This document shows positions 9,357 through 59,279 of a DNA stretch of 64,000 nucleotides, piece by piece. How positions within the stretch are numbered: position 1 is the first letter of the stretch; every line of letters starts with the position of its first letter. A program made the translations under genes and the position numbers. The notes beneath the pieces are model-generated. The model worked only from the letters and a program-made list of their open reading frames with translations, was not told where the DNA came from and did not search any database. The stretch is from assembly GCF_046119375.1 (NCBI RefSeq), contig NW_027362767.1, positions 70,866,001-70,930,000 on the forward strand. The letters run 5' to 3'. The DNA is from Phyllobates terribilis. Taxonomy: Eukaryota.

Positions 9357-12300
9357 ATGACTTCGGGTCTGTCGGTGCCGGACTGCAAGGCGGTGTCTGT
9401 GGTCTTGGAGCATTTCATGGAAGTAGGTAGGTGTCAGTGAGAGGAGCCGGCTGCCGCGGAGGGACATACAGTGATTTATGAGTTGCTGCGGTCATGGTCG
9501 TAGTTCGCGGCTCTGGTGTGTCCATGAGCTGAGGAGGAGACGCGACCTGTCTGTACTGAGGCGTCTGCCCAACATATAGTTCCTTGTTGTATCACTGCTC
9601 CGCCAGAACAGTGCCCCCCCACAGCCTGCCTGACATATACTGCCCTGCTGTATCACTGCACCCCCATAACAGTGCCCCCCCACAGCCTGCCTGACATATA
9701 CTGCCCTTCTGTATCACTGCACCCCCATAACAGTGCCCCCCCACAGCCTGCCTGACATATATTGCCCTGCTGTATCACTGCGCCCCCATAACAGTGCCCC
9801 CCACAGCCTGCCTGACATATACTGCCCTGCTGTATCACTGCACCCCCATAACAGTGCCCCCCACAGCCTGCCTGACATATACTGCCCTGCTGTATCACTG
9901 CACCCCCATAACAGTGCCCCCCCACAGCCTGCCTGACATATACTGCCCTGCTGTATCACTGCGCCCCCATAACAGTGCCACAACAGCAGGCCTGACAGAC
10001 ATATACTGCCCTGCTGTATCACTGCGCCCCCATAACCGTGCCCCCCCACAGCCTGACAGACATATACTGCCCTGCTGTATCACTGCGCCCCCATAACAGT
10101 GCCCTCCCACAGCCTGACAGACATATACTGCCCTGCTGTATCACTGCGCCCCCATAACAGTGCCCCCCCACAGCCTGACAGACATATACTGCCCTGCTGT
10201 ATCACTGCGCCCCCATAACAGTGCCCCAACAGCAGGCCTGACAGACATATACTGCCCTGCTGTATCACTGCGCCCCCATAACAGTGCCCCCCCACAGCCT
10301 GCCTGACATATACTGCCCTGCTGTATCACTGCGCCCCCATAACAGTGCCCCCCCACAGCCTGCCTGACATATACTGCCCTGCTGTATCACTGCGCCCCCA
10401 TAACAGTGCCCCCCCACAGCCTGCCTGACATATACTGCCCTGCTGTATCACTGCGCCCCCATAACAGTGCCCCCCCACAGCCTGCCTGACATATACTGCC
10501 CTGCTGTATCACTGCGCCCCCATAACAGTGCCCCCCCACAGCCTGCCTGACATATACTGCCCTGCTGTATCACTGCGCCCCCATAACAGTGCCCCCCCAC
10601 AGCCTGCCTGACATATACTGCCCTGCTGTATCACTGCGCCCCCATAACAGTGCCCCCCCACAGCCTGCCTGACATATACTGCCCTGCTGTATCACTGCGC
10701 CCCCATAACAGTGCCCCCCCACAGCCTGCCTGACATATACTGCCCTGCTGTATCACTGCACACCTCATGCTGCATCAGGAGAGCGTGCACCCCATTCAGC
10801 GAGTCCCCCAGAGAGTGTCGGGGAGTTGTCTGCCTTTTTAGGGGCTATGGACCTGCTCTTACAATGGTAATAAGAGTAAAATACAAGTGCTTCTCACAAA
10901 ATTAGAATATCATCAAAAAGTTAATTTATTTCAGTTCTTCAATACAAAAAGTGAAACTCGAATATTATATAGAGTCATTACACAGAGTGATCTATTTCAA
11001 GTGTTTATTTCTGTTAATGTTGATGATTATGGCTTACAGCCAATGAAAACACAAAAGTCATTATCTCAGTAAATTAGAATAATTAACAAAACATCTGCAA
11101 AGGCTTCCTATGCGTTTAAAAAGGTCCCTTAGTCTGTTTCAGTAGGCTCCACAATCATGGGGAAGACTGCTGACTTGTCAGATCTCCTGAAGGCAGTCAT
11201 TGACACACTCCACAAGGAGGGTAAGCCACAAAAGGTCATTGCTAAAGAAGCGGGCTGTTCAGAGAGTGCTGTATCCAAGCATATTAATGGAAAGTTGAGT
11301 GGAAGGAAAAAGTGTGGTAGAAAAAGGTGCACAAGCAATCGGGATAACCGCAGCCTTGAAAGGATTGTTAAGAAAAGGCCATTCAAACATTTGGGGGAGA
11401 TTCACAAGGAGTGGACTGCTGATGGAGTCATTGCTTCAAGAGCCACCACACACAGACGTATCCAGGACATGGGCTACAAGTGTCACATTCCTTGTGTTAC
11501 GCCACTCATCACCAATAGACAACGCCAGAAGCGTCTTACCTGGGCCAAGGAGAAAAAGAGCTGGACTGTTGCTCAGTGCTCCAAGGTGTTGTTTTCAGAT
11601 GAAAGTAAATTTTGTATTTCATTTGGGAATCAAGGTCCCAGAGTCTGGAGGAAGAGTGGAGAGGCCACAATCCAAGCTGCTGGAGGTCTAGTGTGAAGTC
11701 TCCACAATCAGTGATGGTTTGGGGAGCCATGTCATCTGCTGGTGTAGGTCCACTGTGTTTTATCAAGACCAAAGTCAGCGCAGCCGTCTACCAGGACATT
11801 TTACAGCCCTTCATGCTTCCCTCTGCCGACAAGCTTTTTGGAGATGAAAATTTCATAACACCTCAGCAGTGCCACAGGCTGATCGCCTCCATGCCACATT
11901 GCCGCATTGATGCAGTAATTGATGCAAAAGGAGCCCCGATCAAGTATTGAGGGCATTTACTGAACATACATTACAGTAGGACGTTTCAGACTTTAAAAAC
12001 ATTTTTCAAGCTGTTGTTATAAAGTATTCTAATTTACTGAGATAATGACTTTTGTGTTTTCATTGGCTGTAAGCCATAATCATCAACATTAACAGAAATA
12101 AACACGTGAAATAGATCACTCTGTTTGTAATGATGCTATATAATATATGGGTTTCACTTTTTGTATTGAAGAACTGAAATGAATTAACTTTTAGATGATA
12201 TCGTAATTTTGTGAGAAGCAGCAGTATGTAGAACAACTGTCTGATCCTGGTTGTGAGAACAGTTCTTGGCTTTTCAGCCCAGTCTTATTAGCGATCGTTA

Positions 12301-18300: not shown

Positions 18301-21300
18301 GAGATGTTCCTGCCTGTCCATAGGATCAATCTCCAGGAAAGACCAAAAGGATTCTGTGTTAAAATTTGCATACCTAACCCTTCTCAGGGGAGCGTAAAGA
18401 CCCTATACCCATTAGATGTCCATACCCTTTACCCATTATTGTCTATATTGAGGTTTTAATACTAGAGAGAGGACCGTCCTGCTTGGGGTCACCTTGTCGT
18501 GGTGGGATGGCTTTTACGCTTTTTTGATAAAAATAGTGTTAACTAAGTTTCCTATATTATTTATGTGTCCTATTACTATTTACCTACTCCGGGGTATATG
18601 CTCATATTTTTTTTTCTCTTAGGTTTAACCCATTAGATAGTTGGCTAGCCAAAATTGGTAGGCTTGGACCGCAATGATCTACTGTGTATGGTGTCTCTAA
18701 TATGTGAATCTTCTGCTACTATTTACATAATCGATTGTCTTAACATGGATATGTCTAACGACTTGAATTCACAAATTGTCTTTTTATACATCTTAGAGAT
18801 ATTCTACAGCTCCACATGGCGAATAGGACAGAGCAGTTTTCCAATCAAAGCAACTCTTTGAAAGATGAAATATCAAAGGTAAAGGTAGTGTTGTAATTAT
18901 GATGTTTATTGTGAACACTGTATCTTAAAATATTAAATATATAAAAAAGTATATTTTATTGTCAAAGGACACAGACTGATGTAAAAAAAAATAAAGCAAT
19001 TAATGCTCCCCTAACTGCCACTCTTCATAAATGGAGGTGGCCCCATACCCACAGCTTTCTCTTCATTTGTATGGAAGTTCTAAAAATTTCCTTGCACGCT
19101 TAGTCTGCAATTTTTGGGACTCATGCAAATTCATGCACAACTGTGCCTTTTTTTTTTTTTCCCTGGATAGTACACGATGCTGCCCTGTTCATGAGATAGG
19201 TGCGGGTCCCAGAGCTGGTACCCACATCTATCATGTACAAGGTGAGAATACCCCTTTAAGTATGATATAATCATATTTTCTTTCCAGGAAACCCTGAGTA
19301 CACATCTTTCTCAATTCCATTGTTCAGGTCCGTCATTGAAGTAGATGTATAGGAAGCAAGCGGTGATGGTCCTGTTACATGACGGACATGATAGACCCCA
19401 TTGACTTATGTTAGCATCTTTCATTTGAATTGGATGGTTTCTCTAGCCATTGGCAGATGATTCTATTTCCCAGCAGCATATATACAGGAAAAGGGGTCTC
19501 TCAGCAAAGACCACAATAAATCCCCCCATTCCCCTATTTGATGCTTGTTTATCCACGTGTCTGACTGAGACGGTATGCACATACTTGCCCAGCAGGCTGA
19601 CTATCAGAATTGCCTCACATTCTGCTAATATTGTTATAGGACATCCATAATATATGGAGCTTTTCCTTGAGTTGCATGTTTGTGTTAATTTGCACTTTAA
19701 ATTATACAAAATTTCTCTGGAGATACTTTCCTATTAGGCAGGGTCATATTCTGTCTCATCTGGTGAGATGGATCCTCAAAGCCTCTGGTCAGGACTAGCA
19801 GTTCCTGAGCTACATACTGAAGATGTACCAAGCTACAGAGAAGATGCTGAATTGGTGAAGCAGGGGTGGAACAGCGGTGGCTGGTGGAACAGCTTTGGCT
19901 GGTGAAGCAGGGGTGGACCAGCGGTGGCTGGTGAAGTGGGGGTGGACCAGCGGTGGCTGGTGAAGTGGGGGTGGACCAGCGGTGGCTGGTGAAGTGGGGG
20001 TGGACCAGCGGTGGCTGGTGAAGCGGGGGTGGACCAGCGGTGGCTGGTGAAGCGGGGGTGGACCAGCGGTGGCTGGTGAAGCGGGGGTGGACCAGCGGTG
20101 GCTGGTGAAGCGGGGGTGGACCAGCGGTGGCTGGTGAAGCGGGGGTGGACCAGCGGTGGCTGGTGAAGCGGGGGTGGACGAGCGGTGGCTGGTGAAGCGG
20201 GGGTGGACGAGCGGTGGCTGGTGAAGCGGGGGTGGACGAGCGTTGGCTGGTGAAGCGGGGGTGGACCAGCGGTGGCTGGTGAAGCGGGGGTGGACCAGCG
20301 GTGGCTGGTGAAGCGGGGGTGGACCAGCGGTGGCTGGTGAAGCGGGGGTGGACCAGCGGTGGCTGGTGAAGCGGGGGTGGACCAGCGGTGGCTGGTGAAG
20401 CGGGGGTGGAAGAGCGTTGGCTGGTGAAGCGGGGGTGGAAGAGCGGGGGTGAAAGAGCGGTGGCTGGTGGAAGAGCGGTGGCTGGTGGAAGAGCGGTGGC
20501 TGGTGGAAGAGCGGTGGCTGGTGAAGCAGGGGTGGAACAGCGGTGGCTGGTGAAGCAGGGGTGGAACAGCGGTGGCTGGTGAAGCAGGGGTGGAACAGCG
20601 GTGGCTGGTGGAACAGCGGTGGAACAGCGGTGGCTGGTGAAGCAGGGGTGGAACAGCGGTGGCTGGTGAAGCAGGGGTGGAACAGCGGTGGCTGGTGGAA
20701 CAGCGGTGGAACAGCGGTGGCTGGTGAAGCAGGGGTGGAACAGCGGTGGCTGGTGAAGCAGGGGTGGAACAGCGGTGGCTGGTGAAGCAGGGGTGGAACA
20801 GCGGTGGCTGGTGAAGCAGGGGTGGCTGGTGAAGCAGGGGTGGAACAGTGGTGGCTGATCTAGGAGAGTTGTAGCAACATAGCAGTGCTGGAACAGTATA
20901 ACACAGATGTTTCTGGAGTCCTGCACAGCGTAGTGGCTGCCTGAGCCGGATTTAAAGGACCCGGGCTGACGTAATTGGAGCACATTGGGTTGTCGGCAGT
21001 GGCTGGCAGCGCTTGGTACTGGAAGCAGCACAGGTGACTGACCAGCATTTTCATAGTATGACACTACTGAATGTTGCCATATATGTATAGATTGTGCCAT
21101 CACAGGTTTTAAACTTCCTTTACTTTCTTATATTATCTTAGTTTTTTTCCCCTTAATTTTAGTTGTCCCTTATGTGTCAATATCAAAGGGCTTTTATCAA
21201 AATGTGTCAGTAAAAGCCTGACCTTTCATTACACAAACCTCAGAGGGTGCCTAGGACTTATGACTTGGCAATGGCCCAGGTGTAACTTTAAGATAAAAAT

Positions 21301-24383: not shown

Positions 24384-24429
<46 letters not shown>

Positions 24430-27400
24430 TACATTCCAAAAGTTTGGACACACCTTCTTTTTTAAAGATTTTTCTGTATTTTCATGACTATGAAAATTGT
24501 ACATTCACACTGAAGGCATCAAAACTATGAATTAACACATGTGGAATTATATACTTAACAAAAAAGTGTGAAACAACTGAAAATATGTCTTATATTCTAG
24601 GTTCTTCAAAGTAGTCACCTTTTGCTTTGATGACTGCTTTGCACACTCTTGGCATTCTCTTGATGAGCTTCAAGAGGTAGTCACCGGAAATGGTTTTCAC
24701 TTCACAGGTGTGCCCTGTCAGGTTTAATAAGTGGGATTTCTTGCCTTATAGATGGGATTGGGACCATCAGTTGTGTTGTGCAGAAGTCAGGTGGATACAC
24801 AGCTGATAGTCCTACTGAATAGACTGTTAGCTGCTTTTTTCTTGCCATAATGCAAATTCTAAGTAAAGAAAAACGAGTGGCCATCATTACTTTAAGAAAT
24901 GAAGGTCAATCAGTCCGAAAAATTGGGCAAACTTTGAAAGTGTCCCCAAGTGCAGTTGCAGAAACCATCAAGCGCTACAAAGAAACTGGCTCACATGAGG
25001 ACCGGCCCAGGAAAGGAAGACCAAGAGTCACCTCTGCTTCTGAGGATAAGTTTATCCGAGTCACCAGCCTCAGAAATCGCAGGTTAACAGCAGCTCAGAT
25101 TAGAGACCAGGTCAATGCCACACAGAGTTCTAGCAGCAGACACATCTCTTCAACAACTGTTAAGAGGAGACTTTGTGCAGCAGGCCTTCTTGGTAAAATA
25201 GCTGCTAGGAAACCACTGCTAAGGACAGGCAACAAACAGAAGAGACTTGTTTGGGCTAAAGAACACAAGGAATGGACATTAGACCAGTGGAAATCTGTGC
25301 TTTGGTCTGATGAGTCCAAATTTGAGATCTTTGGTTCCAACCACCGTGTCTTTGTGCGACACAGAAAAGGTGAATGGATGGACTCTACATGCCTGGTTCC
25401 CACCGTGAAGCATGGAGGAGGAGGTGTGATGGTGTGGGGGGGCTTTGCTGGTGACACTGTTGGGGATTTATTCAAAATTGAAGGCATACTGAACCAGCAT
25501 GGCTACCACAGCATCTTGCAGCGGCATGCTGTTCCATCCGGTTTGCGTTTAGTTGGACCATCATTTATTTTTCAACAGGCCAATGACCCCAAACACACCT
25601 CCAGTCTGTGTAAAGGCTATTTGACCAAGAAGGAGAGTGATGGGGTGCTATGCCAGATGACCTGGCCTCCACAGTCACCAGACCTGAACCCAATCGAGAT
25701 GGTTTGGGGTGAGCTGGACCGCAGAGTGAAGGCAAAAGGACCGACAAGTGCTAAGCATCTCTGGGAACGCCTTCAAGATTGTTGGAAGACCATTTCCGGT
25801 GACTACCTCTTGAAGCTCATCAAGAGAATGCCAAGAGTGTGCAAAGCAGTCATCAAAGCAAAAGGTGGCTACTTTGAAGAACCTAGAATATAAGACATAT
25901 TTTCAGTTGTTTCACACTTTTTTGTTAAGTATATAATTCCACATGTGTTAATTCATAGTTTTGATGCCTTCAGTGTGAATGTACAATTTTCATAGTCATG
26001 AAAATACAGAAATTTCTTTAAATGAGAAGGTGTGTCCAAACTTTTGGTCTGTACTGTTTATATATAATGTATATTAGAAAATGGGAATAACTCTTTTAGG
26101 CAAATTAGGCCTGAACCTTCAGGCGTTAATATCAGGATTATACAAACATGTATTTTTTATTGAATTTTTTTTTTAAAAGGAGTACACCAGCTTCATCAGG
26201 TCTAAGATTTATTTAACAATGAATGCAGTTTGTAATGCAAAATCTGGTGGCAGATCCTCTTTAATATTGAATATCGATGACGTCCGCTTCAATTCTGAAG
26301 TCCTTGTCTGACCTCCCACAGTCAGCAACCAGCGCCCTCGGCAGACAATTATAATAGATTGTTTTGTGCATTAACTAGTTTGGATTTACATGAATATATA
26401 ACTACTGGGAGGACATTGCTCATCCATAATCTTTACTACTGGTAAAAATAGAAGAGAGACATACTTGCACTCTCATAAGGAGAGGCTCTTCATTATAAAC
26501 TAAAGGCAAGACTGAAGAAGACAGCACATCCAAGGTGAATAAAAGGCAATGGTTCTTTAATCTGAATCCATTAAAACAACAAACAATGGATTTAAAACCG
26601 ACGCGTTTCTGGCGAGTCACTCGCCCTTAATCATAGTATAGCACTTGTTACAATGGACAGTGAACCAATCCTGGTGGACAAACACATGACTTAAATGCAA
26701 ATGGCAGGAAAACCACACGACTAAGTATACACCTGAACTGTAATGAAGAACTTGGATATACATAATTACAAAATAAAAAAGGGGAGGGGGGAAAAAGGGT
26801 TCAATACCTTACATCCAGCTCAAAACATAACTGCATTATATAATCCCCTTCACCACCTTGGGTTTTTCCATTTTTGCGTTTTCATTTTTTGCTCCCCTTC
26901 TTCCCAGAGCCATAACTTTTTATTTTTTATTTTTGTGTCAATATGGCTATGTGAAGGCTTGTGTTTTTTTGCGGGACAAGTTGTACTTTTGAACGACACC
27001 ATTGATTTTGCAAAAAAAGTACAATAGTTTTTTGTTTTTACCACGTTCACTGTATGGTAAAACTGACCTGCCATTATGATTCCCCAGGTCATTACAAGTT
27101 CGTAGATGCCAAACCTGTATATGTTCTTTTTTATTTAAGTGGTGAAGAAAAATTCCAAAGTTTGCAAAAAAATAAAAATCTTACAAAAGCGACGGGTCCG
27201 TACCTTCCTGTATATCATCACCTGTAAAAAGAATATCCAAAAAGGAAGTTTGAATTGTGAGGGTATTGTCTGTAAACCGCAGATTGTTTAGATAGGCAGA
27301 AATGTCACGTCTTACCATACCTCACTATAAGGAGATCATCTATATATCTCCCATACCATTTCAGATTGGAGGAAAAGGGCTTAGTTGGATTAAAAATGAA

Positions 27401-30060: not shown

Positions 30061-33000
30061 GCCTTGTGTTATAGGAGAAAATGAAGAATGCCATTTTAGA
30101 CTTAGACAATCGGCAAGAAAATCTGGCCAAAAACATTCCCATCATGAATGCAGCTGAGGACACATACAACAAAGAGCACATCAACTATGAAGACGTGAAA
30201 AAGAAATCTAGTGGTAAGGAAGCCAACCAGAAGATTCGTGGGTTATTAGTAAAACATACCGATTGGTTGGGTTATGTTCACATCTGCTTTGAAACTTCCA
30301 TTTCAGATTCTGTAAAAAAAAAAAAAAAAAAAAAAAAATTGCCCATCAAAATTCCATCATGATGGGAAACTGACGAACCCGACTATCGTGGGTGTTTGTC
30401 TTGTATGGTTGTCATCACCAATGTTATGTTTGTACTTCTGTTCCAATGACGAAACAGAAATACTGAATTAATAAGGATGATGTGAACAAAGACAAATTAT
30501 TCTGACAAATGCAAATTTTATTCAAGAAATGACTTAAACCATCTTATATATCACAGCCATGAAAAGCAAACAGAAAGCCTTGGAGGGATCCATTAACACA
30601 ATCACCAAGGATATTGAAGCCAATTGTAAGATAAAGGTAAAGTAATTGTGCTGATGTGCCGTGGGTGTGCAGCAGATCCGCACTGCAACTAAACTATTAC
30701 CATTTATTTGGGCTAATTTTTCACAATTCTATCGAAATAAGTGACATGCTACAATAAAATCTGGAGATCCACATAGAAATTTTGAATTTTACATGTGAAA
30801 GGAAAACCCCATTCACATTCATAGGATGTGGATTTCATGCAGAACAAATCTTGGAAAACCCCACATGGGTAAACTTACCCTTTTAACCACTTCACGCCCA
30901 TCTACTATATAATTGGCTTATCCCGTCTGTCTGTCCGTCCAGGAAATCCCGCGTCGCTGATTGGTCCGGCCGCGGCCAATCAGCGACGTGGGATTTCAGA
31001 ACAAGATGGCGGCCGTTAGCGGCTCATCTGCCGCACGGAGGTCAGCAGCGATGCAGCCGGGAGATGACCGGCACCGGCCGCGACCAATCAGCGATATTGG
31101 CGTGAAATTTAAAACACCGCTGTCCTGATTGGTCGCAGCCCGGCCGCGAATTGGCGCCGGATTTGAAACACGCAGGCCACCGTCGGGAGATCAGCGGCGA
31201 CCCAGCCGGGAGATGACCGGTGGTAGCCGGTCATCTCCCGGCTGCTTGCAGCAGAAGTACCCCGACTGGCGGCCTCGCTCCCCGGTCCTCCCTTCACACT
31301 TGCCGTCGGGAGATCAGCGGCCGTGGTCAGCGATGTTGTCACAAGCAGTATTGACAACATGACGTAATTACAAAATTCATTAGGGGCCCCGGGGGGATAC
31401 ATTGGGGGGTTAATTTAAAGCTGTGCACAACCATTTAAACACTGCTTCGCTGATTAGTCGCGCCCGGTCGGCCGCATACATATTCTAGAATACCCGATGC
31501 GTTCGAATCGGGCCACCATCTAGTAAGACATAATTGTACATCGTACATCTGGTCTCTCTGAGCTGAGTCTGAATCCTATCTGGCAGATGGCGGCTGTGTT
31601 ACACGGTCTGCAGCTGCCTGTAACAGTGATGAGCGGATCTAGCTCAGACCGCTGCAGTTTCACAATTTAAATGCCGTTGTCGGTGATGCGAATGCTGGTG
31701 AATACATGTAATGACTCCTGTAGTCCCCCGCAACGCAATCGTGAGGTGTTGATGGGTTTTCACCGCAGCTGGGGGCCTTCTGAAAATGGACGTATCCGAT
31801 ACACAAACAGATGAACGTTTCTATTCCTTCATCAGGACACAAAGAAGGATTCATTAAAAGCTCTTAGAAAATCTGCTTTTGAAAAACTTCAGGGTGATCT
31901 TGAAATGTTAAAGCTGATTGACAAAGAAATTTATGAAACAAACAGAAGGCTGGAGCTGGTCCTCATGGAGAACTGCAGACTGAAATTGGTGAGAAAATTT
32001 AAAAGGGTTGTCTAAGATATTTTATTTCTCCCTAATCTTTCACTCAGCAATATAGGTGTAGGTGTAATATACTTAACATTAGACAGGAACACAGTTTTTA
32101 ATATAATGTGGGTTGTGACAGCATTCTGGTGACGTTCCATGTACAGCCCACATGATTTTTCAGCGAAACTGCACTGTCCAGTATATGTAACATCACTGCT
32201 GACGCAAGAATAGGGACAGTGCTGAAGTTGTAGGTCCGTGCACATGTGATCCCCGATTGCTCTCCTGCACACTCAACCGTGCAGAAGTAGGATCGCACGT
32301 GCACGATAACTGCTGTCATGTTTTGTCATCTGTCAGGTTGCTGGGATCGCTGATGAATGAGTGGCGATCGTGATCCCTGCATCCTCTCTTCTCAGTAATC
32401 AGGACTTCTTTTTTTTTTAATCCGATCTTTTTTTATTAAACATACAGGATGTATAACATTTGTTATACACGACATTTGTTATACACGTCATTTATAAAAC
32501 AATATCTTGCATATAAATATGTAAATGTAAGGTGCCCCAGCGAGGTAGTCATGGGCGAGCTGTGGCCCCTGCTCGCTCTGGCTCCCTACAGACAATGTGT
32601 GGCCTCTCTCTGATGTGCTGCGGTGTATGTGGTGCTCTCCACTTACTTCAGACCATCCGGTCGCTTCTGTCTCCAGGCATTTCTCTTCTGGGACTAAGGC
32701 TGCAATAAATTCAGAGGACACAAGATTCTTAACCATAACTGGGACTTTACTTGGGGAAGAGGAATATGTACAATATTTACAGGCAGATATAATGGATCAG
32801 GCCCAACAGGTTATCATCTCTCACAGGTACTGGAAACCACTTCAGCCCTGGTTCCTTCTTTAAGTGAAGCATCTCTAGCCCTAGAGAATCTTCCTCACCA
32901 GCGACAGTATATCCGGATCCTATATCGCCCCACGTCCTAGCCTTGAGTCCTAGCTTCTTCTGCAGCCTGCAGACAGAATGTGCCCTGGGTCCTCAATACC

Positions 33001-36000: not shown

Positions 36001-39000
36001 CCTACACCACGCATTTATTTTGGATCTAAATTTGTCTAGCAAAGGATTAATATTTAGTATTATGTAGTCTATTATGTGTAAATTAATTACTACGCCAAGG
36101 TATTTAAATTTATCTACAACCTGTATTTGAGTTGATGAAATTGAATCCATAGACGGGAGGGGGTCCACTGGTAATAGTGATGATTTTTGCCAGTTAATCT
36201 TTAAGCCAGACCAGCTACCAAACTCCTATTTCCATCATTATTGGTTCTAGTGATGTCTCCATATTTCCCACATATAACATGTCATCAGCGTATAAGCTTA
36301 CTTTCTTTTCTATATCGCTACACCCAAGTCCTACAAAGTTCCACATGTCTCAGTCTACACGCTAATGGCTCTATCGCCAGGGCAAATAATAGGGACAATA
36401 GTGGGCATCCCTGTCACGTGCCTCTATCCAATGCAAATGGGACTGACAGGAGTCCATTAATTTTCAGCCTCGCAGAGGGTGACCTAATACAGTAGTTTAT
36501 CCCAGTTTATAAACTATTGGCCAAACCCCATTTTTTCCAGGACTTTCCACAGATAGTTCCACACTGTCTAATGCCTTTGCGGCATCAAGGGATATTATCG
36601 CTCTGTTCCCCGTCTCGGTGCTACACAGCTACATGACAAGGTATACGCGTCTAATATTAATAGCCGTGGACCTATTAGGCATGAATCCGGATTGGTCTTC
36701 ATGTATCAGTGCCGTGATGACTTTATGAAGCCTGTTGGCCAATATCTTGACCTCAACCAGCAGCAGAGATCGATCTCTAGGAGTCTGGGCACTCAGGGTC
36801 CTTTCCTGGCTTTAGTAACAGAACTACAATTGCTTTGTTCATTGAGGCAGGCAGTCTACCTACCGTTGCAGCTCCCTCTAATACTTTCAGCAATCTAGGA
36901 AGGAGAATCGCTCTATATTCTTTGAAAAATTCACCGGGAAGGTCGTCCGAACCTGGAGCTTTTTCATTCTGAAGTGTGTCCACTGCCTCATCCAGCTCCT
37001 CCACTGATAGTGGTTGATCCAAGTACCTCCTGGCTTCTACTGAGAGATTAGGGAGTTTTACCCTTTCCAAATATGTTTCTATATTTTCCTCCCGTGTTAC
37101 TGATCTAGTGGTGTATACATCTTTAAAATATTGTCTTAGGGTTGATAGGCAGAAATAATTAGGAGTCCAGTGCAGAGAAAGAAAGGGAACAGGGATGAGG
37201 TGAGATTAGCTACAGGATGGAGCTCTTTATTCTGGGGGCTAAGAGGAGGCTATTTATTCTGGAATGGGATTGTTTATAAAGGGGCATGATAGGAGCGGTA
37301 TACTGCAGGAGGAGGCTGTACATAGAGGGGAATCAGAGGTGCAATATAATGTAGGAGGAGGATGTACACAGAGGGGAATCAGAGAAGCAATATACTGCAG
37401 GAGGAGGCTGTACATAGAGGGGAAAGCAGAGTAGTGATGTTCTGAAAGACAAATCTATATATACAGGGACAGAGTTGTGATGTACTGCAGGATGGTATCA
37501 TATTCAGAAAATCTGAGAGGAGCGAAGTTCTGCAGGGTGGGTTATATGTAAAGGGTCTGAGAGCAACCAAGCACTAAACGATGGCTGCTGTATTTGGTGC
37601 TATGTACTGCAGGTTAGTACCGTATACTGAGGGGCAAAGAGGAGCGAAGTTCTGCAAGATGGTACAGTATATAGAGGGGCTGAGAGGAGCAATGTACTGC
37701 AGGATGGGATTGTATGTACAGAGGCTGAGAGGAACGAAACACTGCAGGATAGTACTGTATACAGAAAGGAGCCATGTACTGCAGGATGGTATATTATATA
37801 CTCAGGGATAAAGGGCAGCAATTTACTACAAGATGGAGCTGTACATAGAGGGGCTGAGAGGAGCGATGTACTGCAGGATAGGTCTGACTTCCAAAAGGGG
37901 ACAGTGGCAACTGAACAAGGGAGACTATGGCTGTATTGGTACCACAATCTCATTCTACAACACAGTTGCAGATCCACAGATAATGTGCGGAGGCACAGAG
38001 ATGCCAGGGCTGCATTGGCTCAGATATCACAGAGGAAGAATTATGGGAGCGAGGTGATGGGAGGTAAAGACCAACGATTGCCCATTACTGGGATGTCAAC
38101 AAAAGTTAGAGCTGTTTAGCTGCATAAAATGATTTTCTGACTATATAAATTAGTTGGCGAGAATTGATTTGCAAGTGCCGTTACATCGGCCACAACAATG
38201 GTCTGTGGCTGTTGTACAGGGGTGGGAATATCGCCGCTTACCTGCCAACATCCATGACTCTGCTTTTGATTAGCCGGCCTGGTGCAAAATCTTTGTGGTG
38301 TGATGCAGATGTGACGTCGCTCCAGGCCGGCTAATCAAAAGGAGCGTGTGGAAGCCGGCAGGAAAGAGGTGGTGCATGATGTGGCTATAATTGTTCTGAT
38401 CTCTTTACAGAAAAATGCACAATATAAGGATGATATCAGCGCCATCATAGGAGAATCACAAAACCACTTATCAGCTGCAGATCACCTAGAGAAAGAGCAG
38501 GCGTCTCTTATTGGTAAGTTCAGGATTAGAGATGGGTGAACCCGACCAGTAATGTTTGGCTTTCATACTGGACAGTTACCACAGTGGTCAGGTCAGGAGA
38601 CCGGCGGCCGGTCCGTGCTGGGACCAGGACACATGGATGTGTGAATCCAGCCTTAGCCTGACTGATATATCTTTTCAGATCATCTGCATGAAGGCTGGGA
38701 CCAAGACATCCTTGTCTGCAGTGTAAGTACGTCTTGCAGATTTTTGATTCCTATGCACTAATCATAAAATCAAGTCAATAGACATAAGTGATTCACTTTA
38801 CTGATATTCTGGCCTTATCTGCTAATAAATACCATTAGCAAGAATCCTTCTAGAACTCCTTTCTTTACTTTTTTTTTCCTTCCCTTTTTAAAAGAGACAA
38901 AATTACCATATATACTCAAGTATAAGCCGACCCGAATCTAAGCCGAGGCCCCCAATTACTATAAAAAACTGGGAAAACTTATTGACTTGAGGCTAAACCT

Positions 39001-42000
39001 AGGGTGGGAAATGCAGCAGCTACTGGTAAATTTCCCCATCCTGGTATGCATGGCACCCTTCATCCCCCAATCCTGGTAAACATGGCCCCCCCATCACTGC
39101 ACACATGAAAAAAAAATAAACACCCCTACTCAACTCCCTCCCCGCTGTGTCCTGTCAGTAGCTCATGTCGGCATCTGAGCAGCGCATGACATCACTGCTA
39201 TGCACCCTCAGACGCCGAGGTGAGCAGCAGGTATATTCACTCCTCTCCACGCCGGGACTATGCATGTGGAGAGGGGTGAATATTCACTCTCCTTAATAGA
39301 GCAGTGTGAGTAGCAGTTGCCGCTTCATGCTGCAGCTCTGCGATCACATGTGCCGCTACTAAAGAGAATTAATATTCACCTCTCTCCACGCCCATGGGAG
39401 TGGAGAAGAATGAATATTCATTCTCTCTAAGAGCAGGCACAGAGAATCACGGAGCCACAGCAGGAAGCCGGCGGCTGCGAGTCACACTGTGGTATTAAGG
39501 AGAATGAATATTCACCCCTCTTCATTCCCATGGGCATGGAGAGGGGTGAATATTAATTTCCCTTTAGCAGCGGGCACACGTGGTAGCTGCAGCAACGGCT
39601 AGTGCCTGTGCCCGCTCCTCCGCCGCAACCCCCCCCCCCACCGGTATATACTATAAATAGGAGTGTGTATATATTAAAGGGGGCTTTTTCAGCATAAAAA
39701 ATGTTCTGAAAAAGTCAGCTTATACTAGATTATATACGGTATTTTTTTTTGTCAACATTGTTGTTTGGGTTTCGCAACAATATGACCTGGTAGATTGAAA
39801 GATTGCAGCAAGACTAAATTTGCTTTGTTGCCATTTTCGGAGATCCGTAACACTTGACATTTTTCCATAAATAGAACTGCGTGAGGTTTATTTTATTTTT
39901 TTGGCAGGGCGAACTGTAATTGAGAGAGAGAGAGATATATATATATATATATATATCTATATCTCTAATAGGTCGGCACCACTAGTAAATACAATCTAAT
40001 AGAGTAACCTATGGCTATTAAATATTACTGTTTTACGTCCTGAGTCTGTTATAACATAGCCACATGTAATGCTCAACAGAAGACAGGCAATTATAAAAAA
40101 TAAGAAGAGAGGAAAAAAAACTGTAGCACTCACCCTGTGGCTAAAAAAAATTATCCCTTTATTACATACTGGGAGGAGGATACAGACAGACAAAAAAAGA
40201 GCGATGGTAATCTCCCACTGCTAAGCACTCTTAGAGCCTGGATGAAGCGATTGGATATGCGAAACGGCCATTGCTCTTTTTTCTCTGTATCCTCCGCCCG
40301 GTATGTAATGAAGGGATACGTTTTTAGCTACAGGGTGAGGTGCCACATTATTCGGGTCCTATTTTTATTTTTTTTTTTTACAGTGTTTTAACATGCAGGA
40401 TAAAAATATTTAAACATTTTGAACTTTAAAAAACAGATCAGGTTTTTTTTCCACAAATGGGGGAAAAAGGACAATTTTTATATTTTATTTATTTTTTGTG
40501 CCCCTAGAGAACTTGAGACTATTCAGTCACTGGTACCATACACTGTAATAGTTCTGTACATTGTATTGTAAATTAAACAATCTTCTACATAAGAGCATAG
40601 AATCATAGAATCATAGAATGGTAGAGTTGGAAGGGACCTCCTGGGTCATCTGGTCCAACCCCCTGCTCAAAGCAGGATTCACTAGATCATCTCAGACAGA
40701 TGTCTGTCCAGCCTCTGTTTGAAGACGTCCATTGAAGGGGAACTCACCACCTCTCGTGGCAGCCTGTTCCACTCATTAATCACCCTGTCAAAAAGTTTTT
40801 TCTAATATCTAATCTGTGTCTCCTCCCATTTAGTTTCATCCCATTGCTTCTAGTCTTTCCTTGTGCAAATGAGAATAAAGATGATCCTTCTACAATGTGA
40901 CAGCCCTTGACATATTTGTAGACAGCTATTAAGTCTCCTCTCAGTCTTCTTTTTTGCAAGCTAAACATTCCCAAATCCTGCAACCATTCCTCATAGGACA
41001 TGGTTTGCAGACCAGTCACCATTCTGGTCGCTCTTCTCTGAACTTGCTCCAGTTTGTCTATGTCTTTTTTAAAATGTGGTGCCCAAAACTGTACACAGTA
41101 TTCCAGATGAGGTCTGACCAAAGAGGAGTAAAGACCGATAATGACTTCACGTGATCTAGACTGTATGCTTCTGTTAATACATCCCAGAATTGTATTTGCC
41201 TTCTTTGCTGCTGCATCACACTGTTGACTCATGTTCAGTCTATGATCTATTAGTATACCTAAGTCTTTTTCACATGTACTGTTGCTTAGCTCTATTCCTC
41301 CCATTCTGTATATGCTTTTTTCATTTTTATTGCCCAGATGTAGTACTTTGCATTTTTCCCTGTTAAAAACCATTCTGTTGGTTGCTGCCCACTGCTCCAG
41401 TTTATTTAGGTCTTTTTGAATCCTCTCTCTCTCTTCTCTAGTATTAGCTATCCCTCCTAGCTTTGTGTCATCAGCAAATTTAATCAGTTTACCCTCAATT
41501 CCTTCATCTAAATCATTGATAAAGATGTTGAACAATACAGGTCCCAGGACGGAGCCCTGTGGTACCCCACTTGAGACATTCATCCAGCTGGATGTGAAGC
41601 CATTTACAACCACCCTTTGAGTCCGATCACTAAGCCAGTTATGAATCCACCTAACAGTTGCCTGGTCCATTGCATACTTGGTCATTTTTTCAATAAGGAT
41701 GGTGTGAGATACTTTGTCAAATGCTTTGCTGAAGTCAAGATATACTATATCTACAGCATTTCCCTGATCCACCCAGTCAGTGATTCTGTCATAGAAGGAA
41801 ATTAAGTTAGTCTGACATGACTTGTTAGTTACAAACCCATGCTGACTCTGGTTAATCACTTCATTCTTATCCATGTACTTACATACATGTTGTTTAATAA
41901 TTTGTTCAAAGATCTTTCCTGGTATAGAAGTCAGACTCACCGGCCTATAGTTCCCTGGGTCCACCTTCTTCCCCTTTTTGAAGATAGGAACAACATTTGC

Positions 42001-42951
42001 TCTTCTCCAGTCTTCTGGGACTTCTCCTGTTCTCCAAGAATTTTCAAAGATTATGGAGAGTGGTTCTAAAATTTCTTCTACAATCTCCTTCAGTACTCTG
42101 GGGTGTAATTCATCTGGACCTGGAGACTTGAACTCATTTATGTTAGCTAAATATTCCCTCACAATCTTTCTGTTTACTGATAACTTGGATTCCTCTATTC
42201 CTTTAAAAGGACAGTGAAGATCAGTTGCTGTTACATTTTCTTTCTGAGAGAAAACAGATGCAAAATAGGAATTAAAAAGTTCGGCCTTCTCAACATCCTC
42301 TCTTACCTCTCAGCACAATGATGGGAGACACGAGGGGGCCTTTTAATAGGGTCCGGCTGTTAATGGGGTTGTCTATTGGAGGCGAGTGCCGTTACCTCCT
42401 TACACCTGCCAATACATGCGGACGATCAGCAGTTCTTGTGCATGTGTCTTGTTAAATAACATAGGACATGTGCACACTATCTATTGATGGTGCACTCTGT
42501 ATGGCAGGTGTAGGGGATTATCGGCACCGCTCAATCCCTCTACGGAAGTGACGAGTACTAGACAATCCTTTTACATCATGCTTTCTTCTGTGTATACAGC
42601 TCACACCATTCTGGTAACATGTGCAGGTAACGCTGTCATTTCAGGACTTTTCGGAGAGAGATCAAGAGATCCTAGACGCCATCACCGACCTTTTAAGAAA
42701 AATTAGCAACAGGGAGGAGAAGGTCGGACACCTGAATAATGTACTGCATGAGAAAGTCACTGGACTTTCTTCTCTATTAGAAAGCAAAGCAGGTCTGCAA
42801 CTTTGTAGGATATAGAAAATATTTTTTAGAAACCAAATACTCATAAAAGATTTCAGCAACCAATAAATTTAGTATTTTTTTCTCTTTGATTTCAGGAAAA
42901 AAGGCAACAATGTCTTCCAACTCACTGGGAAAAACTACACCCTTTCCTTGA
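9357..42951 (+). CDS. CCDC175: Coiled-coil domain-containing protein 175 (20 coding exons, 752 aa)
   Basis: Exons: 9357-9426, 12784-12869, 13988-14099, 15720-15855, 16666-16894, 17465-17587, 18174-18283, 18797-18878, 23039-23175, 23279-23389, 23465-23536, 23680-23815, 27686-27817, 30075-30213, 30557-30636, 31836-31988, 38411-38513, 38679-38722, 42645-42792, 42896-42951. All introns are GT-AG, phases are compatible, and the total is 2259 nt with no internal stop. The protein is E/K/L-rich coiled coil ([31 protein letters not shown]...). The name rests on recalled similarity and tail-to-tail synteny with JKAMP; exon 1 assignment is the least certain. Confidence 0.82.
9589..10761 (+). repeat. 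Minisatellite, ~58-61-bp unit, ~19-20 copies, CCDC175 intron 1
   Basis: Unit cactgcgcccccataacagtgcccccccacagcctgcctgacatatactgccctgctgtat; it explains the repetitive ORFs at 9492-10356. Confidence 0.95.
10884..12224 (+). mobile_element. Tc1-like transposon, internally deleted and frameshifted
   Basis: TA-flanked ~200-bp TIRs (caagtgcttctcacaaaattagaatatcatc / gatgatatcgtaattttgtgagaagcagcag). Transposase pieces at 11157-11696 (FSDESKF) and 11612-11950; the QQD...NPIE segment is deleted. Confidence 0.9.
15313..15635. mobile_element. TTAA-targeting (T2/Kolobok-like) MITE
   Basis: TTAA|AGGGGTTGTG...ACAGCCCCT|TTAG termini with internal mirrored gataacttg/caagttatc motifs. Related fragments occur elsewhere, e.g. 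~2213, ~28120, ~46990. Confidence 0.6.
19854..20856 (+). repeat. G-rich minisatellite, 29-bp main unit plus 18-bp and 11-bp sub-units, CCDC175 intron 8
   Basis: ggtggctggtgaagc(g/a)ggggtgga(c/a)cagc repeated; source of the 468-aa minus-strand pseudo-ORF. Confidence 0.95.
22366..22945. mobile_element. Solo LTR (~580 bp), same family as 55875-57495
   Basis: Shares aaacactagggaaagggggagtggagacccctaggcagatct and the ...ccaagcgcagtgac...gacac(a)ccc.gtgac end with the copy in L3HYPDH intron 3. Confidence 0.7.
23586..23621 (+). repeat. (TTA)n microsatellite
   Basis: Direct tract in CCDC175 intron 11. Confidence 0.9.
24352..24426 (+). repeat. (TG)n/(TA)n microsatellite flanking the transposon insertion site
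   Basis: Direct tract immediately left of the Intruder-type TIR. Confidence 0.9.
24427..26056 (+). mobile_element. Full-length DD38E (Intruder-type) Tc1 transposon with ~268-bp TIRs, CCDC175 intron 12
   Basis: Left TIR 24427-24694 and right TIR 25789-26056 are reverse complements of each other; transposase ORF at 24850-25893. Confidence 0.93.
24850..25893 (+). CDS. Tc1-like transposase, 347 aa, second catalytic Asp changed to Ala (QQAND); likely inactive
   Basis: Highly similar to the 227-1279 protein. The N-terminus MQIL is created by a 28-bp inversion, and GAC is changed to GCC at the catalytic D. Confidence 0.8.
   Translation: MQILSKEKRVAIITLRNEGQSVRKIGQTLKVSPSAVAETIKRYKETGSHEDRPRKGRPRVTSASEDKFIRVTSLRNRRLTAAQIRDQVNATQSSSSRHISSTTVKRRLCAAGLLGKIAARKPLLRTGNKQKRLVWAKEHKEWTLDQWKSVLWSDESKFEIFGSNHRVFVRHRKGEWMDSTCLVPTVKHGGGGVMVWGGFAGDTVGDLFKIEGILNQHGYHSILQRHAVPSGLRLVGPSFIFQQANDPKHTSSLCKGYLTKKESDGVLCQMTWPPQSPDLNPIEMVWGELDRRVKAKGPTSAKHLWERLQDCWKTISGDYLLKLIKRMPRVCKAVIKAKGGYFEEPRI
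26595..26638 (-). ncRNA. Minimal type-I hammerhead-ribozyme-like motif (Penelope-type), variant core
   Basis: Minus strand reads ACT ATGATTA AG GGCGAG TGA CTCGCC A GAAA CGCG TC GGT: perfect 6-bp stem II, palindromic stem III ACGCGT and a GUC cleavage triplet. Confidence 0.55.
27904..29632 (-). mobile_element. Degenerate Tc1-like transposon (antisense in CCDC175 intron 13) with an internal MITE fragment
   Basis: Long TIRs (gtgaaataagtattgaacacgtcaccagttttctaagtaaata / tatttacttagaaaattggtgacttgttaaatactta). The minus strand encodes a broken MGKTSE...KHTDGIGY...[16 protein letters not shown]...; 3' part disrupted near 28120-28320. Confidence 0.85.
30901..31523 (+). mobile_element. Non-autonomous Helitron
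   Basis: Inserted between A and T; 5' TC (A|TCTACTATAT); 3' hairpin CCCGAT-gcgttcga-ATCGGG at 31493-31512 followed by ...CTAG|T. Confidence 0.8.
32526..33497. mobile_element. Possible solo LTR (~970 bp)
   Basis: TGTAAGGTGCCCC...CCCCACTACTACA termini; no TSD recognised. Confidence 0.4.
33860..37145 (-). mobile_element. 5'-truncated, degenerate L1/Tx1-like LINE (ORF2 RT and C-terminal Cys/His region), interrupted by a MITE
   Basis: Minus-strand fragments [51 protein letters not shown] and HMFWEC; many stops and frameshifts. Confidence 0.85.
34884..35797. mobile_element. MITE with a CpG-rich internal palindrome, inserted in the L1
   Basis: Termini ggctatatgctcacg / tgtgggcacatccc; internal arms at 35268-35377 and 35409-35529. 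Confidence 0.65.
37290..37880 (+). repeat. Degenerate ~40-bp minisatellite
   Basis: Recurrent tactgcagga(t/g)gg...gtacatagaggg...gagaggagc units. Confidence 0.75.
38906..39739. mobile_element. Non-autonomous Tc1/mariner (Tc2/pogo-like) element
   Basis: TA|CC(A)TATATACTCAAGTATAAGCCGA ... TCAGCTTATACTAGATTATATACGG|TA terminal repeats; internal repeated gagaggggtgaatatt units. Confidence 0.7.
40126..40343. mobile_element. Penelope-derived fold-back element containing a degenerate hammerhead motif
   Basis: ~80-bp inverted arms (40126-40207 / 40268-40343) enclose AGAGC CTGGATGA AG...C GAAA CGGCC ATT GCTCT (40233-40277). Confidence 0.5.
40596..42308 (-). mobile_element. 5'-truncated CR1 LINE
   Basis: 3' tail (ATTCTATG)3 at 40596-40619, a CR1-type 3'UTR, RT ORF at 40780-42162, and an upstream [14 protein letters not shown] motif near 42300. 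Confidence 0.95.
40780..42162 (-). pseudogene. CR1 reverse-transcriptase ORF fragment (460 aa open)
   Basis: [29 protein letters not shown] and FADD motifs; no endonuclease domain; small deletion frameshifts the C-terminus after RKNFLT. Confidence 0.9.
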
Positions 42952-58960: not shown

Positions 58961-59279
58961 GGATTCACATTACATTTGCTTTTTGATTATCCCCCCTTTA
59001 TCTTCCACTTTTGTTTTTTCCTTCCATTCTTTCACAAGCCATAACTTTTTGTTTTTTCTTTTTCTATCAACGTAATTCTTTTTTTGTGCTCGGCTGTTGT
59101 TTTTATTAATACCATTTTGGGGTCTATACATTTTGATCACATTTTTTTTTGGTAACTGCAGTGACAAAAAAAATGGCAATTCTAACTTTTTTTTTTTTTT
59201 CTCCATTTCTGCATTCACCTTGTGGGATAAATATTTTTATAATATATTAGATTGAGCAATTGCGCACCTGGAAACACCG

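What the first reader, a model, noticed from the sequence alone, without database searches (positions are those of the whole stretch)
26595..26638. Hammerhead-ribozyme motif with an apparently compensatory A3-U8 core pair in CCDC175 intron 12
Seen: the minus strand reads ACT-ATGATTA-AG-GGCGAG(TGA)CTCGCC-A-GAAA-CGCG-TC-GGT, with a perfect stem II, the palindromic mini stem III and a GUC triplet. Established: the hammerhead core is CUGANGA...GAAA with a tertiary C3-G8 Watson-Crick pair, and Penelope-like elements carry minimal type-I hammerheads whose palindromic stem III favours dimers. Inference: both positions of the pair have changed (A3, U8) and can still pair, which looks like covariation rather than decay and suggests a variant ribozyme family in frog Penelope-derived repeats. 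Caveats: stem I is only ~3 bp and an extra A precedes GAAA.
Basis: partly seen in the sequence, partly recalled or inferred. Interest (0 to 1): 0.7.

Follow-up and report, generated by a model that had tools for sequence, protein, structure and literature searches.

The report
Solitary Penelope-type hammerhead relic, A3:U8 core
This is one stranded copy of a short frog repeat carrying a Penelope-type mini hammerhead motif. Its core swap (A3:U8 for C3:G8) is shared by the whole repeat family, so it is not damage private to this copy, but this copy is most likely inert and cleavage is untested.

Summary
It fits the published Penelope-like-element (PLE) minimal type-I hammerhead, with three departures from the consensus core: A3, U8 and A11.1. 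The "extra A" is position 11.1, giving a G10.1·A11.1 mismatch.

Contigs from three frog species laid on the locus show a repeat of about 90-130 nt, most deeply covered over the hammerhead core. No listed alternative letter occurs at 26634, 26629 or 26610. The variation inside the motif is almost all CpG decay. So the A3:U8 swap belongs to the family, not to this copy.

This copy has no second motif within 64 kb to form the dimeric helix III, only a 3-bp helix I, a predicted rival hairpin, and no PLE gene nearby. I read it as an inert relic.

Rfam gives no hammerhead hit, but it also misses a canonical mini-hammerhead pair elsewhere in the window, so that blank says nothing.

Natural 3-8 covariation (U3-A8) is already published. 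I found no paper that mentions A3-U8. This scan has noted the same variant in at least 10 other windows of this genome. No catalysis was tested.

The parts
26519..26650 (-). Largest extent of the dispersed repeat copy that carries the motif. It is flanked by single-copy sequence.
   Evidence: tables 2 and 8. Contigs of species B and C align over 26519-26640. Contigs of the source species align over 26553-26648. Depth is single-copy (9.8) at 26350-26539 in X1, and only 8.6-24 (about 1-2.5 times single copy) in the bins from 26654 to 26748.
26553..26648 (-). The part of the repeat shared with other copies in the source species
   Evidence: table 8, records 2-7 of X1. These contigs are 100-717 nt long, align only here, and run on into unlike sequence.
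26600..26634 (-). Hammerhead-like module, from A3 to C17
   Evidence: It is also the depth peak of the repeat in all three DNA runs (bins 26597-26634).
26628..26634 (-). Core box 1, AUGAUUA (A3 U4 G5 A6 U7 U8 A9); the consensus is CUGANGA
   Evidence: No alternative letter is listed at 26634 or 26629, table 3.
26610..26627 (-). Bulged A (26627), the G10.1·A11.1 mismatch (26626/26610), and the 6-bp helix II GGCGAG/CUCGCC with loop UGA
   Evidence: The paralogues vary at 26613, 26616 and 26622.
26606..26609 (-). Core box 2, G12 A13 A14 A15.1
26600..26606 (-). The self-complementary ACGCGU (A15.1 to U16.1) plus C17. This is the minimal helix III that can only become a 6-bp helix with a second copy. 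The predicted cleavage site lies 3' of 26600.
   Evidence: The architecture is as described in PMC4209133.
26635..26637 (-). 5' strand of helix I (ACU); it pairs with 26599-26597
   Evidence: There are only 3 pairs, one of them G·U.
26597..26599 (-). 3' strand of helix I (GGU)
26594..26609 (-). Predicted rival hairpin, GAAAC (26609-26605) paired with GUUUU (26598-26594). It ties up the GAAA box and the 3' strand of helix I.
   Evidence: The minimum-free-energy fold is -12.4 kcal/mol, against -2.3 for the hammerhead fold.
26547..26552 (.). Weak candidate for a target-site duplication, CAATGG; its partner is at 26651-26656
   Evidence: About 0.7 such 6-mer matches are expected by chance. It does coincide with the 26553 and 26648 boundaries seen in the source-species contigs.

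Best explanation
The stretch is one solitary copy, about 100-130 nt long, of a dispersed frog repeat whose 5' part is a Penelope-like-element (PLE) type minimal type-I hammerhead module.

In this repeat family the core reads A3:U8 in place of C3:G8. That swap still allows a Watson-Crick pair. The family also has A instead of C at 11.1. All three states are the family's own and were inherited from the source element. They are not mutations of this copy.

In the source elements, two neighbouring modules would pair through the self-complementary ACGCGU to build a 6-bp helix III and cut after C17. This may need the element's protein, as in the Anolis PLE studied in vitro. This step is inferred from the literature and was not shown here.

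At this locus the module is alone. It has only a 3-bp helix I and a competing hairpin, and there is no PLE gene near it. It is most likely an inert relic. Whether the family's variant core cleaves at all remains open; I put it at roughly 40%.
For: - Sequence and parse.
- Match to the published mini-hammerhead traits: an extra base between 9 and 10.1, a helix II of 6-8 bp, a short helix I, and palindromic 15.2-16.2 (PMC4209133, read).
- Family evidence. Dozens of contigs from three species align at 80% or better over 26519/26553-26640/26648, with peak depth on 26597-26634.
- Private differences of this copy do show up clearly in that table: 26587 T>G in 33 of the X10 contigs, and also 26565 and 26578. 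In contrast, no row is listed for 26634 (A3), 26629 (U8) or 26610 (A11.1).
- The rows listed inside the motif are CpG transitions (26599/600, 26602-05, 26613) plus 26616.
- One X10 contig joins two copies head to head (table 5), as PLE insertions often do (PMC8557442).
- Solitary state: searches find no second ACGCGU-type module in the 64 kb.
- The only reverse transcriptase ORF, 40780-42162 (-), is LINE-type.
- Folding.
- A swapped 3-8 pair can work. U3-A8 occurs naturally, and covarying 3-8 pairs are active in vitro (PMC3088659). The C3G/G8C double mutant partly rescues a PLE hammerhead (PMC11167929).
Against: - No sequences of other copies could be fetched. The family-wide claim rests on the summary tables, where 19 weaker rows were hidden. 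Canonical-core families with a different helix II would not have aligned at all.
- The link to a PLE rests on architecture and literature.
- A11.1 breaks the G10.1-C11.1 pair, which PMC4209133 calls highly conserved.
- The RNA-labelled run has no contig on the motif (X19), though that data set is small.
- No cleavage data exist.
Confidence: 0.78

Rival explanations
1. Founder effect. The family descends from a master element whose hammerhead was already dead. A3, U8 and A11.1 are three unselected hits that spread because PLE mobility does not need the ribozyme. On this reading the Watson-Crick fit of A3 with U8 is a coincidence.
For: - Hammerhead catalytic mutants do not affect PLE insertion in vitro, and no RNA ends were found at the cleavage site (PMC11167929).
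- The third change, A11.1, disrupts a pair instead of compensating for anything.
- Copies decay by CpG loss with no sign of compensation in helix II.
- Helix I is weak and a rival hairpin is predicted.
Against: - My own rough count: among three random hits in about 15 constrained positions, about 1% would fall on both 3 and 8 and give complementary bases.
- The hammerhead core is the best-covered segment of the repeat in three species. That suggests it was the most conserved part among the source lineages.
- The remaining core bases (U4 G5 A6 A9 G12 A13 A14 A15.1 U16.1 C17) are all intact.
Confidence: 0.35
2. Private decay. This copy was a canonical CUGAUGA...GAAA mini-hammerhead that mutated after insertion.
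For: It needs only three substitutions. Most mini-hammerheads in frog genomes are dead single copies (PMC4209133).
Against: -: related contigs in three species show no listed alternative at 26634, 26629 or 26610, although true private changes of this copy (26587, 26565, 26578) stand out clearly.
- All five CpGs of the motif are intact, so the copy has decayed little.
- All three changes are transversions, not the CpG transitions that dominate decay in this family.
Confidence: 0.03
3. Chance resemblance of an unrelated repeat or hairpin to a hammerhead.
For: - The descriptor is loose. At 0.015 hits per 64 kb, a genome of several gigabases would hold on the order of a thousand chance hits.
- There is no Rfam hammerhead hit.
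Against: - Every architectural trait of PLE mini-hammerheads is present at once (one search compared with PMC4209133).
- The motif is the conserved core of a multi-species repeat.
- Rfam also misses the canonical mini-hammerhead pair at 55047-55146, so its silence carries no weight.
Confidence: 0.02

Closest known systems
Minimal type-I hammerheads of metazoan Penelope-like elements (Cervera & de la Pena 2014, PMC4209133; about 9,000 in Xenopus tropicalis)
   Same: Type-I topology, a bulged base between 9 and 10.1, a helix II of 6-7 positions, a very short helix I, a helix III reduced to A15.1-U16.1 around a palindromic tetraloop (dimer logic), a GUC site, and occurrence mostly as dispersed single copies.
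   Different: A3:U8 in place of C3:G8. A11.1 in place of C11.1 (G·A instead of the conserved G-C). Helix I has 3 bp rather than 4-5. No PLE ORF lies beside this copy.
Natural U3-A8 core covariants (Perreault et al. 2011, PMC3088659; about 1,300 Schistosoma mansoni Cercyon-PLE motifs, PMC4209133)
   Same: Both partners of the tertiary 3-8 pair are exchanged for another Watson-Crick pair, family-wide, in a PLE mini-hammerhead.
   Different: Those variants keep pyrimidine-3/purine-8. Here the orientation is purine-3/pyrimidine-8 (A3:U8). I did not find this in any searchable paper. Lunse et al. 2017 could not be read.
PAc (Poseidon, Anolis carolinensis) PLE hammerhead (Frangieh et al. 2024, PMC11167929)
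   Same: A vertebrate PLE mini-hammerhead. The engineered G3:C8 double swap partly restores cleavage, which shows that the 3-8 pair can be exchanged in this ribozyme type.
   Different: PAc has the canonical core. It cleaves only with the element's protein, and cleavage is not needed for insertion in vitro. Nothing comparable was tested for the frog variant.
Amphibian non-LTR retrozymes / satellite-2 hammerheads (PMC7229834; bioRxiv 10.64898/2026.07.22.740005)
   Same: Frog or salamander repeats related to PLE pseudo-LTRs. They carry type-I hammerheads with a 1-bp helix III and a palindromic loop, and act as dimers.
   Different: Those are tandem units of about 170-400 nt with full loop-loop tertiary contacts and a canonical core. 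This is a single short copy with no tandem partner and no loop 1.

Membership tests
PLE-type minimal type-I hammerhead | Core box 1, C3 U4 G5 A6 N7 G8 A9 | tested here: not met
   reads A U G A U U A. Positions 4, 5, 6 and 9 are met. Positions 3 and 8 are both changed, to a pair that can still form a Watson-Crick pair.
PLE-type minimal type-I hammerhead | Core box 2, G12 A13 A14, the A15.1-U16.1 pair, and H17 | tested here: met
   GAAA at 26609-26606, U 26601, C 26600.
PLE-type minimal type-I hammerhead | Unpaired base between A9 and 10.1 | tested here: met
   A at 26627. The trait is as stated in PMC4209133.
PLE-type minimal type-I hammerhead | Conserved G10.1-C11.1 pair closing helix II | tested here: not met
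   G 26626 lies opposite A 26610. A11.1 is also the family state, since no alternative is listed.
PLE-type minimal type-I hammerhead | Long helix II (6-8 bp) | tested here: met
   GGCGAG/CUCGCC, 6 perfect pairs with loop UGA.
PLE-type minimal type-I hammerhead | Helix I of about 4-5 bp | tested here: inconclusive
   Only 3 contiguous pairs, one of them G·U. The hammerhead fold scores -2.3 kcal/mol against a minimum free energy of -12.4.
PLE-type minimal type-I hammerhead | Palindromic 15.2-16.2 / loop 3 that allows a dimeric helix III | tested here: met
   ACGCGU is self-complementary.
PLE-type minimal type-I hammerhead | Belongs to a multi-copy consensus family | tested here: met
   dozens of contigs in each of three species, peaking on the motif.
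PLE-type minimal type-I hammerhead | Lies in the pseudo-LTR of an element that encodes RT and a GIY-YIG endonuclease | tested here: not met
   There is no such ORF within the window. The only RT, 40780-42162 (-), is LINE-type. Most published mini-hammerheads are likewise orphan copies. The link of the family to PLE genes could not be tested here.
PLE-type minimal type-I hammerhead | Self-cleavage 3' of position 17, as a dimer | not testable with these tools
   No raw RNA reads were available. The RNA-labelled contig run has nothing on the motif.
Rfam hammerhead families (covariance models) | A score at or near the gathering threshold | tested here: inconclusive
   No hammerhead hit, even at E<=10. 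The canonical mini-hammerhead pair at 55047-55146 is missed too, so the models do not detect this minimal type.
Non-LTR retrozyme | At least two tandem units, each with a hammerhead | tested here: not met
   A single copy, with no second module in 64 kb.

The most novel reading that the evidence does not exclude
The A3:U8 (plus A11.1) module is a working, probably protein-assisted, hammerhead used by a lineage of frog Penelope-like elements. It would be the first natural hammerhead core with a purine at position 3 and a pyrimidine at position 8, maintained by selection across several frog species.
Probability: 0.3. Interest if true: 0.5.

Novelty: new variant of a known kind. Interest (0 to 1): 0.33.

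Why it matters
The C3-G8 pair positions the general acid of the hammerhead. In nature it has been reported to covary only to U3-A8. A whole repeat family built on A3:U8 would be a natural test of whether the pair's orientation matters. It would also bear on whether PLE mini-hammerheads are under selection for cleavage at all, which is still disputed. Cleavage is dispensable for PLE insertion in vitro, and some PLE clades lack the motif altogether. The single copy at this locus has no likely consequence for its host gene.

Tried and rejected
1. Rfam scans. I ran the whole window at gathering threshold, 651 nt at E<=10 and 101 nt at E<=10. None gave a hammerhead hit. I reject this as evidence because the canonical control at 55047-55146 is also missed.

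2. Other copies in the window. There are none.

3. Fetching paralogue sequences.
- An IUPAC pattern left open at positions 8 and 11.1, with Y/R at the CpG positions and starting at U4 (so position 3 was not in it), found 0 loci in metagenome contigs.
- A word search with the 66-aa ORF that reads through the repeat, restricted to residues 1-40, found no candidate.
- No real alignment or covariation count could therefore be made.

4. A PLE gene nearby. None was found. The one RT ORF is LINE-type.

5. Literature. Lunse et al. 2017 (PMC5785218) and Przybilski & Hammann 2007 (PMC1986816) are not held. No supplement is held for PMC4209133. The 2026 retrozyme preprint's supplements contain no matching strings.

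6. Target-site duplication. There is only a 6-mer, CAATGG, which is not significant alone.

7. Host gene identity and strand (CCDC175). This was not verifiable, because exon-sized pieces cannot reach a full-length protein under the word search's length rule. Two coiled-coil-like ORFs on the + strand (30081-30362 and 42621-42815) have no Pfam family passing its cut-off.

Full report
**Observation.** The minus strand of 26638-26595 reads uACU AUGAUUA A GGGCGAG UGA CUCGCCA GAAA CGCG UC GGUuu. GAAACGCGTC occurs once in the window, and the helix II hairpin occurs once.

**Parse.** Cervera & de la Pena (PMC4209133, read) give the recurring traits of metazoan PLE mini-hammerheads:
- a base between positions 9 and 10.1;
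- a highly conserved G10.1-C11.1 pair;
- a long helix II (6-8 bp) and a short helix I;
- palindromic 15.2-16.2 / loop 3, which implies action as a dimer.

With that template no insertion or deletion is needed. The "extra A" is position 11.1 (26610). The module then differs from the consensus at exactly three positions, all transversions: C3>A (26634), G8>U (26629) and C11.1>A (26610). The first two can still pair. The third leaves G10.1·A11.1 unpaired. U4, G5, A6, A9, G12-A14, A15.1-U16.1 and C17 are all intact, and ACGCGU is self-complementary.

**Chance.** I wrote a descriptor for A3-U8 mini-hammerheads: helix II of at least 5 bp with the closing mismatch allowed, GAAA, a palindromic helix III, then U and H. 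It hits once in the window, against 0.015 expected per 64 kb in 200 dinucleotide shuffles. Across a genome of several gigabases that rate would still give many chance hits, so the descriptor alone proves nothing. The repeat evidence below settles the point.

**Family evidence.** I laid Logan contigs on 26350-26900 at 80% likeness or better. The runs were the source species (X1), two related species (X9, X10) and one RNA-labelled run (X19).
- The flanks are at or near single-copy depth in X1: 9.8 over 26350-26539, and 8.6-24 in the bins from 26654 to 26748.
- Between about 26519/26553 and 26640/26648, many contigs from all three DNA runs align. Most of them run on into unlike sequence at both ends (table 8).
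- Summed depth peaks on the hammerhead core, at 348-442 over 26597-26634. It falls several-fold on either side.
- Changes private to this copy are obvious in table 3. At 26587 T>G appears in all 33 X10 contigs and in 267 of 315 depth in X9. Other examples are 26565 A>T and 26578 A>G.
- No row is listed for 26634, 26629 or 26610.
- The rows listed inside the motif are transitions at its CpGs (26599/600, 26602-05, 26613), plus 26616 G>A, which turns the loop-closing G-C into G·U.

Nineteen weaker rows were hidden. Rows with only 5-10% share were shown, so any alternative at the three key positions must be rare. The listed alignment pieces mostly end at or beyond 26634, and none ends at 26633 or 26628. 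That is where a local aligner would clip if position 3 or 8 differed.

I conclude that A3, U8 and A11.1 are the state of this repeat family in at least three species. They are not decay of this copy. This conclusion has limits:
- It rests on summary tables, not on an alignment.
- It covers only contigs similar enough to align.
- My attempts to fetch real paralogue sequences failed.

**State of this copy.** All five CpGs of the 44-nt motif are intact, in a window whose CpG observed/expected ratio is 0.47. The copy shows three clear private differences from the family. It is therefore a fairly well kept copy. It is also alone:
- There is no second module of this type within 64 kb, so there is no partner for the dimeric helix III in cis.
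- Published single mini-hammerheads show no detectable self-cleavage (PMC4209133).
- Helix I has three pairs.
- ViennaRNA puts the hammerhead fold at -2.3 kcal/mol against a minimum free energy of -12.4. In the minimum-energy fold, GAAAC (26609-05) pairs with GUUUU (26598-94), which hides box 2 and the 3' strand of helix I.
- There is no PLE ORF nearby. The neighbours are a Tc1/mariner element (24428-26055) and a very high-copy repeat starting near 26845. The only RT in the window is LINE-type.
- The RNA-labelled run has no contig on the motif. That is a weak negative.

**Rfam.** There is no hammerhead hit at gathering threshold or at E<=10 on 651 nt and 101 nt. As a control I ran the same scan over a canonical PLE-type mini-hammerhead pair that I found at 55047-55146 (CUGAUGA-C-GCUGC...GUGGU-GAAA-CAUG-UU on the minus strand, with an inverted partner on the plus strand). 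It also gets no hammerhead hit, only weak matches to microRNA hairpin models.

**What is known.**
- The 3-8 pair covaries to U3-A8 in natural hammerheads, and covarying pairs are active in vitro (PMC3088659).
- The same U3-A8 variant occurs in about 1,300 Schistosoma Cercyon-PLE mini-hammerheads (PMC4209133).
- In the Anolis PLE "PAc", the single mutants C3G and G8C kill cleavage and the double mutant partly restores it. That ribozyme needs the element's protein, and cleavage is not required for insertion in vitro (PMC11167929).
- Naiad PLEs multiply without hammerheads (PMC8557442).
- From my own memory, not checked here: Przybilski & Hammann 2007 found that any Watson-Crick pair at 3-8 keeps cleavage competence in some hammerheads, while others prefer pyrimidine-3/purine-8.
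- The string "A3-U8" occurs in no paper of the searchable library. Lunse, Weinberg & Breaker 2017, the largest survey of PLE hammerhead variants, could not be read.

**Reading.** Two explanations remain for the family-wide state.
- (a) The swap is a tolerated or selected covariation in working source elements.
- (b) It is a founder effect from a master copy whose ribozyme was already dead. This is possible because PLEs do not seem to need cleavage to move.

For (a): by my rough count, the odds that random hits fall on both partners and give complementary bases are about 1%. The rest of the core is intact, and the core is the best-covered part of the repeat in three species. For (b): the uncompensated A11.1, the weak helix I, and purely neutral CpG decay among the copies. 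I put catalytic competence of the family's module at about 40%, and activity of this particular copy below 10%.

**Earlier notes of this scan.** The same A3:U8 Penelope-type motif has been noted in at least 10 other windows of this genome. Four follow-ups read it as an inherited family trait in dead copies. One describes an abundant 148-nt repeat that begins with the motif, which matches the extent I see here. These notes are unchecked AI leads. My result agrees with them independently, but only through summary tables. One note names the genome as the golden poison frog. I did not verify that.

**Gene context.** L3HYPDH exon 1 is confirmed at 50379-50909 (+). The "CCDC175 intron 12" label and the gene's strand were not verified. 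Two coiled-coil-like ORFs lie on the + strand (30081-30362 and 42621-42815). If CCDC175 runs on that strand, the motif on the minus strand is antisense to the host transcript. That is inference only.

**Verdict.** This is an ordinary relic copy of a mildly interesting natural core variant of a known ribozyme class, and its catalysis is untested.

Noticed in passing
window 55047-55146: An inverted pair of canonical PLE-type mini-hammerheads. The minus strand, 55084-55053, reads CUGAUGA-C-GCUGC AUAU GUGGU-GAAA-CAUG-UU. The plus-strand partner starts GUGAUGA, so it has G3. Together they form a long hairpin, which Rfam scores only as weak microRNA-like matches.
   Followed up: partly
window 36262-36288 (-): CUGAUGA-CAUGUUAUAUGUGG-GAAA-UA. 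It looks like a decayed relative of the 55-kb mini-hammerhead family, without loop 3.
   Followed up: no
window 24428-26055; also 1-1441: A Tc1/mariner transposon with 271-nt terminal inverted repeats (97% complementary) and an open 347-aa transposase ORF (24850-25893, with HTH_Tnp_Tc3_2 and DDE_3 domains). A 95-98% identical partial copy lies at the start of the window.
   Followed up: partly
window about 26845-26941 (+), also 59009-59070: The start of an extremely high-copy repeat. Summed contig depth is about 1e5 in three frog species, and it is also present in the RNA-labelled contigs. It is unrelated to the hammerhead repeat.
   Followed up: no
window 40780-42162 (-): A 460-aa ORF with an RVT_1 domain (E 9e-36). 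Its closest solved structures are the LINE-1 ORF2p and R2 reverse transcriptases, so this is a LINE fragment and not a Penelope RT.
   Followed up: partly
window 50379-50909 (+): A 176-aa ORF matching the first 143 positions of Pfam Pro_racemase (E 3e-51). This fits exon 1 of L3HYPDH. A 30-nt-period minisatellite follows it at 50850-51270.
   Followed up: partly
window 19749-20928; 9502-10845; 57948-58387; 37242-37898: Four tandem arrays, with periods of 29 nt, 61 nt, 40 nt and about 45 nt.
   Followed up: no
table 5, run X10: One contig of a related species joins 26586 to 26626 on opposite strands. That is two copies of the hammerhead repeat head to head, the inverted arrangement typical of PLE insertions.
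   Followed up: no
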